From contig NC_043011.1 of assembly GCF_006345805.1 (NCBI RefSeq), forward strand, positions 31,198,464-31,262,463: 64,000 bases of DNA. The letters run 5' to 3'. The notes beneath the pieces were generated by a model. It was not told where the DNA came from and ran no database searches. It saw only the letters and a list, made by a program, of their open reading frames with translations. How positions within the stretch are numbered: position 1 is the stretch's first letter; the number at the start of each line of letters is the position of its first letter. Source of the DNA: Octopus sinensis. Lineage: Eukaryota. The position numbers were made by a program, and so were the translations under genes. Below, piece after piece: positions 33,742 through 54,800 of the stretch.

Positions 33742-33863
33742 TCAGTTGAGATTCTTTTCCACAATAATTTGTGGTTTAAAATTGACTTCTTTCTTGGCTT
33801 CTTCAAACAGATTTTCAACATGGTCTTGTGGTGCACATCCAATTCTGAAGAATGAAATTTCAC
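33742..33863 (-). CDS. Fusion gene exon 8 (YrdC C-terminus, stop)
   Basis: ttttcag|GTGAAATT; GEISFFRIGCAPQDHVENLF...KNLN*; minus-strand AATAAA at 33690-95. Confidence 0.88.
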
Positions 33864-51800: not shown

Positions 51801-54800
51801 AGTGTTACCTGAAATTCTAGCATACCACGTTCTCTCATTAAATTATTATGACTATATCATCTCTTTCACTTTTGTGTGTGCTTTTCGATCAAGAATTTGT
51901 ACACGTGGATTTGATTCCTAGCTCAAGTCAATCTCATATCGATATGCCACTGGTATCGATTCCATGAATTCCACTGATGTAGTGTGAGTTGAGTAAAACA
52001 TTTTGTCAAAGACAGGTGGCAATAAGACTTGAAAATAGTCTAACGAGGCTTTTAACCACTGAAACGTAGGGACACCTGAAAATTATGTAGAACTAGCAGT
52101 ATCGCCCGGCGTTGCTCGGGTTGTAAGGGAAATAACTATACAGCATTTTTAGAGAGTTATAGCCAAAAAATAGCAAAAAAATGCATTAAAAATGGAAAAA
52201 ATATGATGGTAAATTTTTTTAAAAATCGTTTAGTCATCGTAGACATTTTTAGAGAGTTACTTCCCTTTAAAAAATATGCATGAAAATGGAAAAAAATTAT
52301 GGTAAATTATTTTTAAAATCGTAGACTCATCGTAGACGCGCGCTAATACCCAGAAGGGCTCGATATGAATCACGACTATAAGATACCCGGTTTTGGTTAA
52401 ACTGCACCGCAAAATGTGGGAGTAGTTAGGAATCTAAATCGGAGTAGACAGACACACAACTTCACTTTTATATATAAAGATATATCATATATTTATTTCA
52501 ATGTAGAGCTTGATTCTATTTTCAAGCTCTCTTTTTTTTGGCTCTGCTTATATATAATCATTGATATAATTAATTGCTCTAAATAAAAGCATTTCTTTTT
52601 CACTTTTGTTGAGTTTTCTGCTAATCGCTTCTCACAAAAGAAATATTATCGTTGTTATTATTTCAAATTTTGGTTCAAGACCAACAATTTTGAGGTGGGG
52701 GTAGGCAAGTTGAAAACATTGACTCCATGCCTCAACTGGTGCTTATTTTATCGACCCTGAAAGGATAAAACGTAAAGTTGAACTCAGCAGAATTTGAACT
52801 TAGAGCGTAAAGAAAGAGTCGGAAGAAATGCTGCTAAGCATTTAGTCCGACGTACTGACGATTCTGCCAGCTCGCCAATTTTCTTTATTATTATGACTGA
52901 TTTATTCATGTACGAGGGATTGCCGAAAGTTCCTGGCTTTAAGGGTGTCGCGAAAGGACTGGTTTGTGTCCCAATCTCCCGAGTTCTTTTACAGGGCTTA
53001 GAAAAACTGATGGACCGCTGCAATAAGTGTGTGAATGTGAGAGGGGAATGTGTTAAATGAAATCATAATTAACTGATCCTTTTATATTTTCTTTTACCCA
53101 AAGCCAGGGGCTTTTCAGCATCCTCTCGTAATTACTATAACAGGTCATTTCTTTAACTTGATCTACAATTTCATTTTTATTTAATTTTTCTATTCGGTTT
53201 GCAAGATTCTTGATATGAATTCACGTGTTGAGACAAATCTTGTGTCTAGGGAGGGTTATTACACCAATTGGCGTAAAAACCCTACCAAAATACTACAGGA
53301 TTAATTCTTATTGTTAACGCTGGTAATTAAAACTCCCTCGGAATGTCTTTTACGAACGAAATCAAATGTTTTTTCTGTTCTTAATGATTCGACTGCTTGC
53401 ATTTATCATAAATTACTACACCACAGAATATATAAGCTGTGAAATTCTCTATTGACCAGAAACCTTTCTAAAACAATATCATCTCTTTTGCTTATAACTT
53501 TACCAGCAGTATCGCCCGGCGTTGCTCGGGTTTGTTTCGACCCGCTGGAATTGGAATTTTTGAAAAGTAAGAATTTTGCATTATGTAGCTTGTTATTCTC
53601 TTCAAGTGAACATTTTTCTGGTTGAATACACCGAAAAGTGGCGACACAGCAGTGAAAAAATCGTAAAAAATAGGGATTTTCATAGAAAAAAGCACCTTTT
53701 TGATGTAAATAATTTTTGTTGTTAACATGGTCCGATTTGAATTTTATCTTCTACGGAAGGAAGAGCAACCCTTCTTCTATCATACTCTCAATTTTGGTCA
53801 ACTTGCGCCGCAGGGTCTCGGAGGAGATAGTGTTAGCTGAAGGCTACCAAACCTGCCGCACACAGACAACTTCAGCTTTATATAGAGAGATAACACACAC
53901 ACACACACATTAATACACACACACACACACATGTATGTATGGATGTATGTATGTATATATGTACATCTGTCCACTTCTTGCCATATTTTTATCCTTCACT
54001 TCCTACACACACACACGCACACATACACACACCTTCTTAGCTTACAATTTCTTTCTTTCAACAATTGACAACTGAAGTACGCTCGCCAATGAATACTACA
54101 AAAAGTTAGCGACAGATGTCTGTTTCCTTTTTTTTTAGGATTGGTTTAAGCATTAATAAGAGAAAGTAGCAGAATGTGTGATCTGTAGGAGAAAGTGTGG
54201 TAATAGCAGGAGTAAAGCATTTGAAATGAGAGAGGCAAATCGTAAAATATTGAGTTTTCTCGAATTTTTGCTGAATTGGGGGTGAAATTGAAAAAAATGT
54301 ATATGCCATGACCCAATCGAATCTACTTCGAAAAATCATAGGTAAATTCCAATTGAAGAAATTCTATATTGTACAATTGTATTAAAAACAAACTATGTGG
54401 GAGGCAGAGAAAATCTGCCTTTTATCATAAGAGATTATTCCAAACAGACAAGCCAAGACATGAAAACTTACCAGATGCCATGACCCAATCGAATCTACTT
54501 CGAAAAATCATAGGTAAATTCCAATTGAAGAAATTCTATATTGTACAATTGTATTAAAAACAAACTATGTGGGAGGCAGAGAAAATCTGCCTTTTATCAT
54601 AAGAGATTATTCCAAACAGACAAGCCAAGACATGAAAACTTACCAGAAAGGATGAGAGCAGGAGGAGAACCATTTTCATTGAGGATATTCTCCACAGCTA
54701 CCACAGTCGCTGCCATAATGTTTGCAATCAAACCGAGGGCACCGGGTTCGGCATATAATATGGCGGCGAATGCTTCGTTTTCTTGTTTGGGCGTTTCCAT
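33742..54800 (-). CDS. Triple GPR1/FUN34/YaaH (SatP-like) membrane-repeat protein fused to a C-terminal YrdC/Sua5 domain, 853 aa: complement(join(33742..33863,39993..40079,43909..44434,48386..48474,49874..50071,50268..50545,50643..51747,54644..54800))
   Basis: Eight exons, all GT-AG, phases 1-2-1-1-0-1-1 all compatible, 2562 nt open to TGA. Repeat 1 YAEPGALGL...GGFLQLLAGFMSYRRNDHLTGSAFIVFASLW aligns by eye with E. coli SatP LANPAPLGL...[31 protein letters not shown]. Residues 610-853 are YrdC-like. Confidence 0.88.
34470..34975 (+). mobile_element. RTE LINE 3' fragment
   Basis: RRVQFAGHCCR...GRTLSYPDVISRDTG...AMMDREVWR followed by (GAT)n. Confidence 0.8.
35794..36014. mobile_element. piggyBac-like MITE
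   Basis: TTAA|CCCTTTAG...CTAAAGGG|TTAA. Confidence 0.85.
38662..39055 (-). mobile_element. SINE family A, full length
   Basis: Same body as the 20745 copy. Confidence 0.88.
39301..39600. repeat. AT-rich foldback palindrome inserted in (TA)n
   Basis: Arms are reverse complements around AAAACGTATATATTTGGTAAATATATACGTTTT, apart from one indel of about 27 nt. Confidence 0.75.
39993..40079 (-). CDS. Fusion gene exon 7 (YrdC)
   Basis: atacag|GCCAC...AAAG|gtaaat; HKIDGMICDGESRETAPSTVVNC (DG...STVV motif). Confidence 0.92.
40830..41362 (-). mobile_element. Diverged family-A SINE with an expanded compound microsatellite (ATCT)n(CT)n(AT)n(GT)n at about 41045..41190
   Basis: SINE halves on both sides of the microsatellite. 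Confidence 0.7.
41488..41660. repeat. (TAT)n microsatellite tracts
   Basis: Direct observation. Confidence 0.95.
42650..43053. mobile_element. Merlin-like MITE, 8-bp TSD CAGTTTAT
   Basis: TIRs GGATCTTTTCGGTTTGAAC..GCAG; TSD at 42642-49 and 43054-61; GG termini with an 8-bp TSD fit Merlin/IS1016. Confidence 0.8.
43909..44434 (-). CDS. Fusion gene exon 6 (YrdC/Sua5 core)
   Basis: ttatag|GCTAGC...CTAG|gttggt; GGIVGVPTDTVYAL...VKERPSEKP...CIRIPD...GPVALSSANPSG. Confidence 0.93.
44646..45061. mobile_element. Merlin-like MITE, 8-bp TSD AATATAAG
   Basis: Near-identical to the 42650 copy; TSD at 44638-45 and 45062-69. Confidence 0.82.
45962..47040 (+). mobile_element. Putative solo LTR (right boundary uncertain)
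   Basis: Starts TGTAGC; CCAAT motifs; TATAAAAG at 46200; AATAAA at 46858; no coding capacity; no TSD identified. Confidence 0.5.
47843..48246. repeat. 404-bp hairpin palindrome (about 185-bp arms, 36-nt loop)
   Basis: TGTAGCGTAGC...GCTACGCTACA; arms are homologous to 45962..46182. Confidence 0.9.
48386..48474 (-). CDS. Fusion gene exon 5 (end of repeat 3)
   Basis: tttaag|GAATT...TTAAAA|gtaaga; GIVSLYGTFAGMTNGTLQGHLVPLGDPILK matches the SatP C-terminus (..N..G..VLP.G). Confidence 0.85.
48578..48962 (-). mobile_element. SINE family A, diverged
   Basis: Family body recognisable. Confidence 0.75.
49874..50071 (-). CDS. Fusion gene exon 4
   Basis: ctttgtag|CATCT...GCAG|gtaagt; SLAFVLRPAS...FVTALLA. 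Confidence 0.87.
50268..50545 (-). CDS. Fusion gene exon 3 (start of repeat 3)
   Basis: ttttcag|GAGTGTT...AATC|gtacgt; SVGAKVKYYDESLAPDEVVETLCFLGN...YWICWSIYLIN. Confidence 0.85.
50643..51747 (-). CDS. Fusion gene exon 2 (rest of repeat 1 and all of repeat 2)
   Basis: ttgtag|GTGTCCAT...ACAAG|gtttgt; 1105 nt, highly hydrophobic. Confidence 0.93.
52092..52481 (+). mobile_element. HINE/Helentron-type element
   Basis: Same 5' and 3' ends as the 11874 copy. Confidence 0.65.
52913..53128 (+). mobile_element. mariner-derived MITE
   Basis: TA|CGAGGG...CCTCTCG|TA; retains the transposase C-terminus FLQGLEKLMDRCNKCVNVRGECVK*. Confidence 0.8.
53502..53892 (+). mobile_element. HINE/Helentron-type element with a different internal segment
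   Basis: Same 5' stem-loop, unrelated interior, ends TTTATATAGAGAGAT. Confidence 0.6.
54303..54647. repeat. Exact 172-bp tandem duplication including the exon-1 splice donor
   Basis: 54303..54475 equals 54475..54647; ACTTACCAGA occurs at both 54466 and 54638. Confidence 0.92.
54644..54800 (-). CDS. Fusion gene coding exon 1 (METPKQ...YAEPGALGL...PALILS)
   Basis: AAGATGG start context; donor TCTG|gtaagt; acceptor tttag| at 54809 implies a further upstream exon. Confidence 0.85.

What the first reader, a model, noticed from the sequence alone, without database searches (positions are those of the whole stretch)
33742..54800. Acetate-channel (SatP/GPR1-FUN34-YaaH) triple repeat fused to a YrdC/Sua5 enzyme in one animal gene
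Seen: eight phase-compatible exons give one 853-aa ORF; residues 1-609 are three hydrophobic SatP-like repeats, and exon 5 (…PLGDPILK|gt, phase 0) joins exon 6 (ag|ASQPP…, phase 0) directly into a full YrdC fold. The ORF track shows only disconnected pieces. Established: SatP/Ady2/Gpr1 proteins are small carboxylate channels best known from bacteria, archaea and fungi; YrdC/Sua5 makes threonylcarbamoyl-AMP from Thr, HCO3-/CO2 and ATP; the mammalian YrdC homologue IRIP has been reported to modulate membrane transporter activity. Inference: a channel-enzyme in which anion flux feeds or is gated by a cytosolic YrdC domain (bicarbonate, carboxylate or ATP sensing), or a non-tRNA carbamoylation pathway. 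I know of no functional description of this architecture, but cannot check databases for unannotated homologues.
Basis: partly seen in the sequence, partly recalled or inferred. Interest (0 to 1): 0.95.

Follow-up and report, generated by a model that had tools for sequence, protein, structure and literature searches.

The report
Octopus acetate-channel triple repeat fused to YrdC
This is a real, single octopus gene that joins three copies of a bacterial-type acetate channel to a tRNA-modification-type enzyme; the gene is already annotated and the same architecture was described in vertebrates in 2025-26, but nobody knows what it does.

Summary
Eight GT/AG exons on the minus strand (54800 to 33742) give one 853-aa ORF. 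Its sequence is identical to RefSeq XP_036365476.1, "uncharacterized protein LOC115219664" of Octopus sinensis.

Residues 1-609 are three tandem six-helix units. They are homologous to each other and to SatP/Gpr1-Fun34-YaaH, but this shows only at family-profile and fold level; the octopus sequence alone misses PF01184.

Residues 610-853 are a TsaC/YrdC-type domain. It keeps the KxR/SxN tetrad and four of five L-threonine contacts, all invariant in 39 orthologues.

The fusion is not an annotation artefact:
- More than 100 animal orthologues of about 850-900 aa carry it.
- Intron-free transcript contigs span both parts.
- The phase-0 junction intron sits at the same position in octopus, gar and amphioxus.
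- Both halves evolve at dN/dS about 0.11.

The architecture was already published for vertebrates, without functional data (Ghasemi et al., bioRxiv 2025 / iScience 2026). So this is a new member of a known, uncharacterised kind.

Small additions here: vertical descent in molluscs, two ancient paralogue clades, probable algal relatives, and presence in platypus. The channel-enzyme mechanism remains inference.

The parts
54644..54800 (-). Exon 1. ATG at 54800-54798; aa 1-52. Holds the start of SatP-like repeat 1, including the EPGALGL variant of the NPAPLGL signature (aa 18-24).
   Evidence: In O. bimaculoides this exon is half lost in an assembly gap.
50643..51747 (-). Exon 2, aa 53-420. Holds the rest of repeat 1, the conserved cytosolic linker (LPGFGN...EKKKNTKYAEP) and all of repeat 2.
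50268..50545 (-). Exon 3, aa 421-513. Holds the linker and the first half of repeat 3. Donor gtacgt, phase 1. The intron position is shared with gar and amphioxus.
49874..50071 (-). Exon 4, aa 514-579; repeat 3 continued.
48386..48474 (-). Exon 5, aa 580-609. Holds the last helix of repeat 3 and ends ...LVPLGDPILK. This aligns with the natural C-terminus of SatP (...VLPIGE).
44435..48385 (-). Intron 5, phase 0: the junction between the channel module and the enzyme module. It has the same alignment column and phase in octopus, gar and amphioxus.
43909..44434 (-). Exon 6, aa 610-784. Holds a linker of about 25 aa and most of the YrdC/TsaC domain (PTDTVY, K672-E-R674, K678, R744, S765-A-N767-P-S-G). 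There is no ATG before the domain.
39993..40079 (-). Exon 7, aa 785-813; YrdC domain continued (S803-T-V).
33742..33863 (-). Exon 8, aa 814-853 plus TGA (33744-33742). Holds the end of the YrdC domain (R820) and the C-terminal helix.

Best explanation
SHOWN. The region is one protein-coding gene, LOC115219664 of Octopus sinensis. It is the cephalopod orthologue of the animal family recently called 'vertebrate ATOs' (zebrafish si:ch211-153b23.3).
- The product has 18 transmembrane helices arranged as three tandem six-helix units of the SatP / AceTr (Gpr1-Fun34-YaaH) fold.
- A linker of about 25 aa follows, then a single-domain TsaC/YrdC-type module with no SUA5 domain.
- SatP has both termini in the cytoplasm and each unit has an even number of helices, so the enzyme module should be cytosolic.
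- The enzyme site is intact. The KxR/SxN tetrad, the PPi contacts and four of five L-threonine contacts of Sua5 are identical and invariant from octopus to vertebrates.
- Repeat 1 is the most conserved and repeat 3 the least; repeat 3 has lost the signature motif.
- In repeats 1 and 2 the Phe of SatP's hydrophobic Phe-Tyr-Leu constriction is replaced by Asn or Asp, and the signature Asn by Glu.

INFERRED, about 0.3-0.4 for this particular mechanism. Two chains assemble into a SatP-like six-pore ring. One or two of the pores (repeats 1 and 2) conduct a small anion. The tethered enzyme uses ATP, L-threonine and bicarbonate/CO2 at the cytosolic mouth to make threonylcarbamoyl-AMP or a close analogue. 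Permeation of bicarbonate or a carboxylate would therefore be coupled to an adenylate-forming reaction. The gene exists beside the canonical YRDC in vertebrates and has been lost in therian mammals. Its role is therefore probably specialised rather than the housekeeping t6A pathway.

The confidence given (0.6) is for the whole statement: the identity and architecture part alone is about 0.95, the mechanism part about 0.3-0.4.
For: - Gene model and identity to RefSeq.
- Orthologues with both domains in more than 100 animal species.
- Intron-free 3.0-3.1 kb Logan transcript contigs from two sequencing runs, with one 891-aa ORF spanning both modules.
- Junction intron and three other introns conserved in position and phase in octopus, gar and amphioxus.
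- dN/dS 0.11 (TM part) and 0.12 (YrdC part) against dS 0.10 versus O. bimaculoides.
- Repeats homologous to each other (hhalign 97.6%, 97.9%, 94.1%; controls below 1%).
- Each repeat profile hits only SatP in the PDB.
- PF01184 in 35 of 39 orthologues and PF01300 in 39 of 39.
- AlphaFold model (pLDDT 83, pTM 0.72) with 6+6+6 helices and an alpha/beta domain.
- Foldseek: Sua5/TsaC2 E=3e-10; SatP target TM-score 0.76-0.80.
- Ligand residues mapped on P. abyssi Sua5: 10 of 12 identical and invariant. Residue roles come from PMC6004061 and PMC2685093.
- SatP motif mapping.
- The dimer-of-triplets ring was proposed independently by Ghasemi et al..
Against: - No functional data exist for any family member.
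- The octopus TM sequence alone does not reach PF01184.
- The SatP constriction Phe and the signature Asn are replaced, so selectivity, or even conduction, may differ from SatP.
- Repeat 3 is degenerate.
- No octopus cDNA was examined here. RefSeq models are predictions, and an older O. bimaculoides annotation split the gene in two, although assembly gaps explain that.
- Whether octopus has a separate canonical YRDC was not established.
Confidence: 0.6

Rival explanations
1. Two neighbouring genes wrongly joined. A SatP-like gene ends after exon 5, where intron retention gives ...PILKVRIAL*. A separate YRDC gene has its first exon hidden in the 4-kb intron.
For: Read-through of the exon 5 donor reaches a stop after five codons. 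Older O. bimaculoides models were split into a 475-aa and a 283-aa protein. Some species have stand-alone YrdC-like paralogues of this subfamily.
Against: - Exon 6 has no ATG upstream of the domain.
- The old 283-aa model itself starts inside exon 4 and crosses the exon 5/6 junction.
- The split coincides with assembly gaps.
- The fusion is present in more than 100 species and on intron-free transcript contigs.
- The junction intron is conserved in position and phase across phyla.
- Both halves are under equal constraint.
Confidence: 0.03
2. The YrdC module is a ligand sensor rather than an enzyme. Binding of ATP and/or L-threonine gates the channel, as nucleotide-binding domains do in other channels, with no net chemistry.
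For: YrdC-fold proteins bind ATP tightly (PMC2685093). Binding residues would be conserved under this model too.
Against: The whole catalytic constellation is invariant over more than 500 My, including residues that contact PPi. That is more than binding alone usually requires. No precedent is known to me for a YrdC fold acting as a pure sensor.
Confidence: 0.2
3. The 18-helix module is mainly a membrane anchor. It places a TC-AMP synthase at a particular membrane, for example next to a membrane-associated t6A transferase, and its pores are vestigial.
For: Repeat 3 has lost the signature motif. The hydrophobic constriction and the NPAPLGL Asn are altered in repeats 1 and 2.
Against: Repeat 1 has 33 invariant positions in its 20-sequence alignment. 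These include pore-lining equivalents (Q64, D76, W90, N27) and the E-P-x-x-L-G motif. That is far more than an anchor needs. dN/dS of the TM part equals that of the enzyme.
Confidence: 0.15
4. Vectorial activation. The imported carboxylate itself (acetate, succinate, lactate) is adenylated by the YrdC-like domain and so trapped metabolically. This is the coupling suggested by Ghasemi et al.
For: The authors' suggestion. YrdC-like folds in HypF and TobZ adenylate other carbamoyl or carboxyl substrates; this is established knowledge, not tested here.
Against: Four of five L-threonine contacts (T651, R744, S803, R820) are retained and invariant. This argues that the amino-acid substrate pocket has not been remodelled for a simple carboxylate.
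Confidence: 0.1

Closest known systems
'Vertebrate ATO' proteins (Ghasemi et al., bioRxiv 10.1101/2025.05.26.656167; iScience 2026, PMC13316224), e.g. zebrafish si:ch211-153b23.3 and Oryzias A0A3B3D9A3
   Same: Same architecture: three Gpr1/Fun34/YaaH units plus a C-terminal Sua5/YciO/YrdC domain, about 850-900 aa. About 37% identity over the full length. Four shared intron positions, including the junction. The octopus gene groups with mollusc orthologues beside the chordate clade A.
   Different: The paper treats the family as vertebrate and reads the few protostome sequences as possible horizontal transfer. Here the gene is found across cephalopods, gastropods and bivalves, with a species-like tree and shared introns. 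That points to vertical descent from the bilaterian ancestor. The paper gives no cephalopod analysis.
SatP / YaaH of E. coli and Citrobacter koseri (PDB 5ZUG, 5YS3, 5YS8); fungal Ato1/Ady2 (AceTr family, PF01184)
   Same: Six-helix fold and the same order of conserved elements: signature before TM1, GG..Q..AG, the SYGxFW tryptophan, and C-terminal LP.G. These are the only PDB sequence hits of each repeat profile. Target TM-score 0.76-0.80.
   Different: Three units sit in one chain instead of one. NPAPLGL becomes EP(G/A)xLGL in repeat 1 and EPMGMGF in repeat 2, and is absent in repeat 3. The constriction Phe17 becomes Asn (39 of 39) in repeat 1 and Asn/Asp in repeat 2. The octopus sequence alone is below Pfam detection. 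A cytosolic enzyme is attached.
TsaC / YrdC / human YRDC (single-domain threonylcarbamoyl-AMP synthases, PF01300, COG0009)
   Same: Fold, PF01300 at 114 bits, the KxR/SxN tetrad, and a Lys at the E. coli K56 position (K-x-R-x-x-x-K). L-threonine and PPi contacts are retained. No SUA5 domain.
   Different: Tethered to an 18-helix membrane module. His67 of Pa-Sua5 is Cys. Activity is untested. It is a paralogue that coexists with canonical YRDC in vertebrates and is absent from therian mammals.
Other YrdC-domain fusions: TsaN (TsaD-TsaC-SUA5-TcdA, PDB 8IDE), HypF, and bacterial YwlC-LMW-phosphatase fusions
   Same: The YrdC fold is used as one module of a larger protein.
   Different: Those partners are soluble enzymes of the same pathway. 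Here the partner is a channel or transporter.

Membership tests
AceTr / Gpr1-Fun34-YaaH (PF01184; SatP, Ato1) | Significant sequence match to PF01184 or to SatP | tested here: met
   Octopus alone: no hit at E<=1. Family profiles: repeat 1 E=3.1e-6, repeat 2 E=6.7e-10, repeat 3 E=3.7e-5 against SatP 5ZUG, with no other PDB family hit. 35 of 39 orthologues hit PF01184, best 1.2e-10. The feature is met at family level, not by the single sequence.
AceTr / Gpr1-Fun34-YaaH (PF01184; SatP, Ato1) | Six-transmembrane-helix SatP fold | tested here: met
   AlphaFold model of the Haliotis orthologue (54% identical; pLDDT 83): 6+6+6 helices. Foldseek to 5YS3/5YS8/5ZUG gives target TM-score 0.76-0.80 and probability 1.0. 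The octopus protein itself could not be submitted.
AceTr / Gpr1-Fun34-YaaH (PF01184; SatP, Ato1) | NPAPLGL(M/S) signature before TM1 | tested here: inconclusive
   Repeat 1 has E18-P-G-A-L-G-L, with E, P, L and G invariant. Repeat 2 has E226-P-M-G-M-G-F. Repeat 3 has none. This is a variant motif in which Asn is replaced by Glu.
AceTr / Gpr1-Fun34-YaaH (PF01184; SatP, Ato1) | Hydrophobic Phe17-Tyr72-Leu131 pore constriction | tested here: not met
   Repeat 1: N27 (Asn in 39 of 39) / F86 / I144. Repeat 2: N235 (Asp or Asn) / Y289 (His or Tyr) / L347. Repeat 3: unaligned / Y500 / F548. The Phe is replaced by a polar residue.
AceTr / Gpr1-Fun34-YaaH (PF01184; SatP, Ato1) | Hexameric ring; transport of acetate or succinate | not testable with these tools
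   Needs a structure of the assembly and flux assays.
TsaC / YrdC / Sua5 (PF01300, COG0009) | PF01300 above the gathering score, and the YrdC fold | tested here: met
   114.5 bits against a cut-off of 25.1, aa 638-820. Foldseek to Sua5/TsaC2/YrdC gives E=3e-10 to 2e-6.
TsaC / YrdC / Sua5 (PF01300, COG0009) | KxR ... SxN tetrad, which separates YrdC from YciO | tested here: met
   K672, R674, S765 and N767 are invariant in 39 orthologues. The criterion comes from PMC2685093 and PMC6004061. The profile hits Sua5 at E=1e-23 and YciO at only 2e-3.
TsaC / YrdC / Sua5 (PF01300, COG0009) | L-threonine pocket (Pa-Sua5 T35, H67, R121, S181, R195) | tested here: met
   T651, R744, S803 and R820 are identical and invariant. 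H67 is replaced by C683 (Cys in 33 of 39).
TsaC / YrdC / Sua5 (PF01300, COG0009) | Makes TC-AMP; supports t6A formation | not testable with these tools
   Needs an enzyme assay, or complementation of yeast sua5 or an E. coli tsaC depletion strain.
Animal triple-AceTr + YrdC fusion ('vertebrate ATO', clade A) | Three AceTr units plus a C-terminal YrdC in one polypeptide of about 850-900 aa | tested here: met
   Orthology is supported by the tree and shared introns.

The most novel reading that the evidence does not exclude
The triple-SatP + TsaC fusion is an ancient eukaryotic channel-enzyme rather than a vertebrate invention. It would have been present before animals (probable algal and other protist homologues), duplicated into two paralogues before the bilaterian ancestor, and later lost in therian mammals. 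In this reading a SatP-type pore with a polar constriction delivers bicarbonate or another small anion directly to a membrane-tethered threonylcarbamoyl-adenylate synthase. The product would serve something other than bulk tRNA t6A.
Probability: 0.15. Interest if true: 0.8.

Novelty: new member of a known kind. Interest (0 to 1): 0.42.

Why it matters
AceTr/SatP channels were long thought to be absent from animals. [quoted passage not shown]

This family fuses the two. It has been conserved under strong constraint from molluscs to birds and platypus, and lost in therian mammals. It is a clear unsolved case of a channel coupled to an enzyme whose third substrate, bicarbonate/CO2, is itself a small anion.

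The octopus copy adds no new architecture. It does give a complete, cleanly assembled protostome reference, including exon 1, which is missing from the O. bimaculoides assembly. Together with shared introns and the tree, it argues that the fusion is ancestral to bilaterians rather than horizontally acquired. That widens the choice of model organisms for functional work.

Tried and rejected
- Pfam on the octopus protein and on each repeat separately gave no PF01184 hit. The homology had to be shown with family profiles.
- My first exon 3/4 junction (846 aa) was wrong and was corrected against orthologues.
The Haliotis orthologue was modelled instead.
- The second homology search, with aa 514-853, was meant to find junction-spanning cephalopod transcripts and a canonical octopus YRDC. 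It returned mostly partial models of the same family and bacterial YrdC fusions. Cluster look-ups of the nearest short hits were again fragments or paralogues. The existence of a separate canonical YRDC in octopus was therefore not established.
- Comparing intron 5 with O. bimaculoides to find a hidden alternative first exon is uninformative. Introns are about 90% identical throughout, and the O. bimaculoides intron holds a 2.1-kb gap.
- The clade-B paralogue is not in this window.
- The organism behind the environmental homologues could only be narrowed to 'probably a photosynthetic protist', from neighbouring genes.
- The tree is a simple neighbour-joining tree without bootstrap.

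
Full report
**1. The observation**

The window is AT-rich animal DNA (GC 0.31-0.42). Stop-free segments on the minus strand between 54.8 and 33.7 kb contain hydrophobic SatP-like sequence and a YrdC-like sequence. 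I rebuilt the gene from splice sites.

My first model (846 aa) used a weak donor in exon 3. Comparison with orthologues showed that exon 3 runs on to ...WSIYLIN|gtacgt and that exon 4 starts at ...gtag|(P)SLAFVL. The corrected model has eight exons: 54800-54644, 51747-50643, 50545-50268, 50071-49874, 48474-48386, 44434-43909, 40079-39993 and 33863-33742. All have AG/GT boundaries and compatible phases, and they total 853 codons plus TGA.

An exact-sequence look-up shows that the 853-aa product is RefSeq XP_036365476.1, 'uncharacterized protein LOC115219664 [Octopus sinensis]'. UniRef automatically names it threonylcarbamoyl-AMP synthase. The window is therefore O. sinensis, and the gene is already annotated as one gene.

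**2. Whether the fusion is real**

A search with the membrane part alone (aa 1-602) returned 158 proteins. Most are about 850-900 aa long and carry PF01300, often with PF01184. They come from cephalopods, gastropods, bivalves, amphioxus, lampreys, sharks and rays, ray-finned fishes, lungfish, coelacanth, amphibians, reptiles, birds and platypus.

- Two Logan contigs of 3.0-3.1 kb, from two sequencing runs, carry an uninterrupted 891-aa ORF with UTR-like flanks that spans both modules. A gene with at least seven introns cannot appear like this in genomic DNA, so these are transcripts of a single mRNA in a related mollusc.
- I mapped the exon structures of the gar and amphioxus orthologues onto the alignment. 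Four of the seven octopus introns are at the identical column and phase in all three species: after aa 52 (phase 1), aa 513 (phase 1), aa 609 (phase 0, the junction intron) and aa 813 (phase 1).
- Against the collinear O. bimaculoides locus (about 90% identity in introns), all exons align without gaps. dN/dS is 0.11 for the membrane part and 0.12 for the YrdC part, at dS 0.10.
- Exon 6 contains no ATG before the domain.
- Older O. bimaculoides models split the gene into 475-aa and 283-aa proteins. The 283-aa model starts at an internal Met in exon 4 and itself crosses the exon 5/6 junction. That assembly has gaps in exon 1 and intron 5, which also explains the artificial N-terminus of the current O. 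bimaculoides model.

The two-gene alternative is therefore very unlikely, although no octopus cDNA was examined here.

**3. The membrane module**

The octopus sequence and its three thirds do not hit PF01184 even at E<=1.

- *Sequence against SatP.* An alignment of 39 orthologues (A1) used as a profile hits E. coli SatP (5ZUG) at E=6.7e-10 and C. koseri SatP (5YS3) at 4.3e-9, through repeat 2 and over nearly the whole SatP chain. Separate profiles of repeat 1 and repeat 3 hit the same two SatP sequences at 3.1e-6 and 3.7e-5, and nothing else in the PDB up to E=10. 35 of the 39 orthologues individually hit PF01184.
- *Repeats against each other.* Profile-profile comparison gives R1-R2 97.6% (E=3.6e-12, 169 columns), R2-R3 97.9% and R1-R3 94.1%. 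Comparisons with the YrdC part give below 1%.
- *Fold.* An AlphaFold2 model of the Haliotis orthologue (54% identical; pLDDT 83, pTM 0.72) shows 6+6+6 helices followed by an alpha/beta domain. Foldseek against the PDB finds SatP as the only membrane protein with a good fit (target TM-score 0.76-0.80, probability 1.0).

The 'three SatP-like repeats' claim therefore stands.

- *Departures from SatP*. The NPAPLGL signature is E-P-G-A-L-G-L in repeat 1 and E-P-M-G-M-G-F in repeat 2, and is missing in repeat 3. The Phe of the Phe17-Tyr72-Leu131 constriction is Asn in all 39 sequences in repeat 1 and Asn/Asp in repeat 2. The SYGxFW tryptophan is retained in all three repeats: invariant in repeats 1 and 2, and 38 of 39 in repeat 3.
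- *Conservation.* It falls from repeat 1 (33 invariant positions in the 20-sequence repeat-1 alignment) to repeat 3 (three in its 20-sequence alignment).
- *Module boundary.* Repeat 3 ends ...LVPLGDPILK. This aligns with the natural C-terminus of SatP (...VLPIGE), so the junction intron lies exactly at a module boundary.

**4. The enzyme module**

PF01300 scores 114.5 bits against a cut-off of 25.1. The best solved relatives are Sua5 of P. abyssi and S. tokodaii, TsaC2 of T. maritima, and E. coli YrdC. YciO scores far lower. There is no SUA5 domain, so this is the single-domain TsaC/YRDC type.

Published residue roles are as follows. K50 and R52 are essential and absent from YciO (PMC2685093). 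In P. abyssi Sua5 the tetrad is K56xR58/S143xN145, PPi contacts are N62, S147 and G148, and L-threonine contacts are T35, H67, R121, S181 and R195 (PMC6004061). I mapped these twelve positions onto the octopus domain. Ten are identical and invariant in all 39 orthologues. N62 is an invariant Lys, and E. coli YrdC also has a Lys (K56) at the matching K-x-R-x-x-x-K spacing. H67 is Cys in 33 of 39. The active site thus looks intact and still shaped for L-threonine plus ATP.

**5. What is already known**

A full-text search finds one paper on this architecture: Ghasemi et al., bioRxiv May 2025 / iScience June 2026. Using PF01184 hmmsearch, they report:
- 'vertebrate ATOs' of about 900 aa with three Gpr1/Fun34/YaaH units and a C-terminal Sua5/YciO/YrdC domain;
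- two clades, in all vertebrate lineages 'except mammals';
- an AlphaFold-SatP superposition (TM-score 0.82);
- a hypothesis that two chains form a SatP-like six-unit ring.

They give no functional data. They suggest that the few protostome sequences inside the vertebrate clade may reflect horizontal transfer. The zebrafish gene names appear otherwise only in transcriptome tables.

**6. What this analysis adds**

- *Molluscs.* The fusion is general in molluscs. A neighbour-joining tree (no bootstrap) gives two animal clades: A, containing this gene and si:ch211-153b23.3, and B, containing si:ch211-153b23.4. Each holds molluscs, amphioxus and vertebrates in species-like order. With the shared introns, this supports vertical descent and a duplication before the bilaterian ancestor. 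The clade-B gene is not in this window.
- *Relatives outside animals.* An exhaustive HMMER search with exon 6 found longer relatives (about 1070-1140 aa) in an MMETSP transcriptome and in marine metagenomes. They have repeat-1-, repeat-2- and (more weakly) repeat-3-like segments, the YrdC domain and an extra C-terminal tail. One lies on a 20-kb contig beside an RRM gene and a CobN/Mg-chelatase gene split into several pieces. That suggests an intron-containing photosynthetic eukaryote. The architecture may therefore predate animals.
- *Mammals.* Platypus has the gene, so the loss is in therians, not in all mammals.

**7. Mechanism**

Shown: one polypeptide with three SatP-fold units and an apparently competent TsaC-type site, under strong constraint.

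Inferred: the enzyme is cytosolic (from SatP topology); two chains form a six-pore ring; repeats 1 and 2 conduct a small anion; and the enzyme makes TC-AMP or a close analogue at the pore mouth. Its substrates include bicarbonate/CO2, so feeding by a bicarbonate-conducting pore is an attractive specific version.

I give the coupled channel-enzyme reading about 0.3-0.4. The rivals are a sensor-only YrdC (0.2), an anchor-only membrane part (0.15) and adenylation of the imported carboxylate (0.1; disfavoured by the retained threonine pocket).

**8. Verdict**

The gene is an already annotated orthologue of a recently described but functionally unknown family. It is interesting as an open problem, but not as a discovery in this window.

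Noticed in passing
window 54303-54646: A perfect (100%) tandem duplication of 172 nt (54303-54474 and 54475-54646). It begins 3 nt inside exon 1 on the minus strand, so it duplicates the exon 1 GT donor 172 nt further into intron 1. It is either an assembly artefact or a very recent duplication. Use of the second donor would shift the reading frame.
   Followed up: partly
window 25504-25614 and 29176-29289 (+ strand): Exons of ribosomal protein S27 (RPS27; 38 aa are 100% identical to my recalled human sequence). The gene lies downstream of the fusion gene on the opposite strand. The same neighbourhood (CPEB / fusion gene / RPS27) is seen in O. bimaculoides locus L003.
   Followed up: partly
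window 15798-16187, 20762-21152, 23060-23416, 38672-39054, 48757-48951: A dispersed SINE-like repeat family of about 390 nt (64-91% identity between copies). Copies lie inside introns 4 and 7 of the gene, and the same family occurs in the O. bimaculoides locus. Other two-copy repeats are at 35252/37505, 42837/44847 and 45960/47841.
   Followed up: no
L003 9255-9704 and 14590-16751 (O. bimaculoides CM046618.1): Assembly gaps remove the first two thirds of exon 1 and part of intron 5. The NCBI model P0003 (766 aa) therefore starts with an artificial exon (MEVLNAAG...) that has no counterpart in this window. Older models split the gene into XP_014769522.1 (475 aa) and XP_014769501.1 (283 aa).
   Followed up: yes
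P0245, P0246, P0250, P0251, P0244 (related loci, not in the window): A second paralogue clade (zebrafish si:ch211-153b23.4 type) has the same three repeats plus YrdC. It is present in fishes, amphioxus and molluscs, including Argonauta (1163 aa with a long low-complexity tail). In P0250 the KxR stretch reads K-K-L-A-E-D-R-P, so its spacing appears altered.
   Followed up: partly
L007 4670-7954, L006 1927-5301; P0252 (MMETSP): Non-animal homologues of about 1070-1140 aa have the same module order plus a C-terminal extension of about 200 aa. L007 also carries an RRM gene and a CobN/Mg-chelatase gene broken into four same-strand pieces, which suggests an intron-containing alga.
   Followed up: partly
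P0121, P0122, P0126, P0132, P0136, P0150: Caenogastropods (Batillaria, Littorina, Gigantopelta, Babylonia, Nucella) have stand-alone or tandemly duplicated YrdC-like proteins of this same subfamily. In Batillaria and Nucella they are encoded next to the fusion gene, judging by consecutive locus tags.
   Followed up: no
PMC11140123 (zebrafish WGCNA): si:ch211-153b23.3 and si:ch211-153b23.5 are hub genes of one co-expression module together with irg1l (itaconate synthesis) and noxo1a. This is a weak hint at epithelial or innate-immune expression and at a link to carboxylate metabolism.
   Followed up: no
P0077: Platypus (LOC103171094, 872 aa) retains a full-length orthologue, although the published description says the family is absent from mammals. 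The loss would then be in therians only.
   Followed up: no
window 14449-14847 (+) and 41000-42400: A 132-aa ORF resembles the C-terminal part of a retroelement protein (...NRPDIMIWDREEKLCTVVEISCPADVN...). There is also a long microsatellite / low-complexity tract inside intron 6.
   Followed up: no
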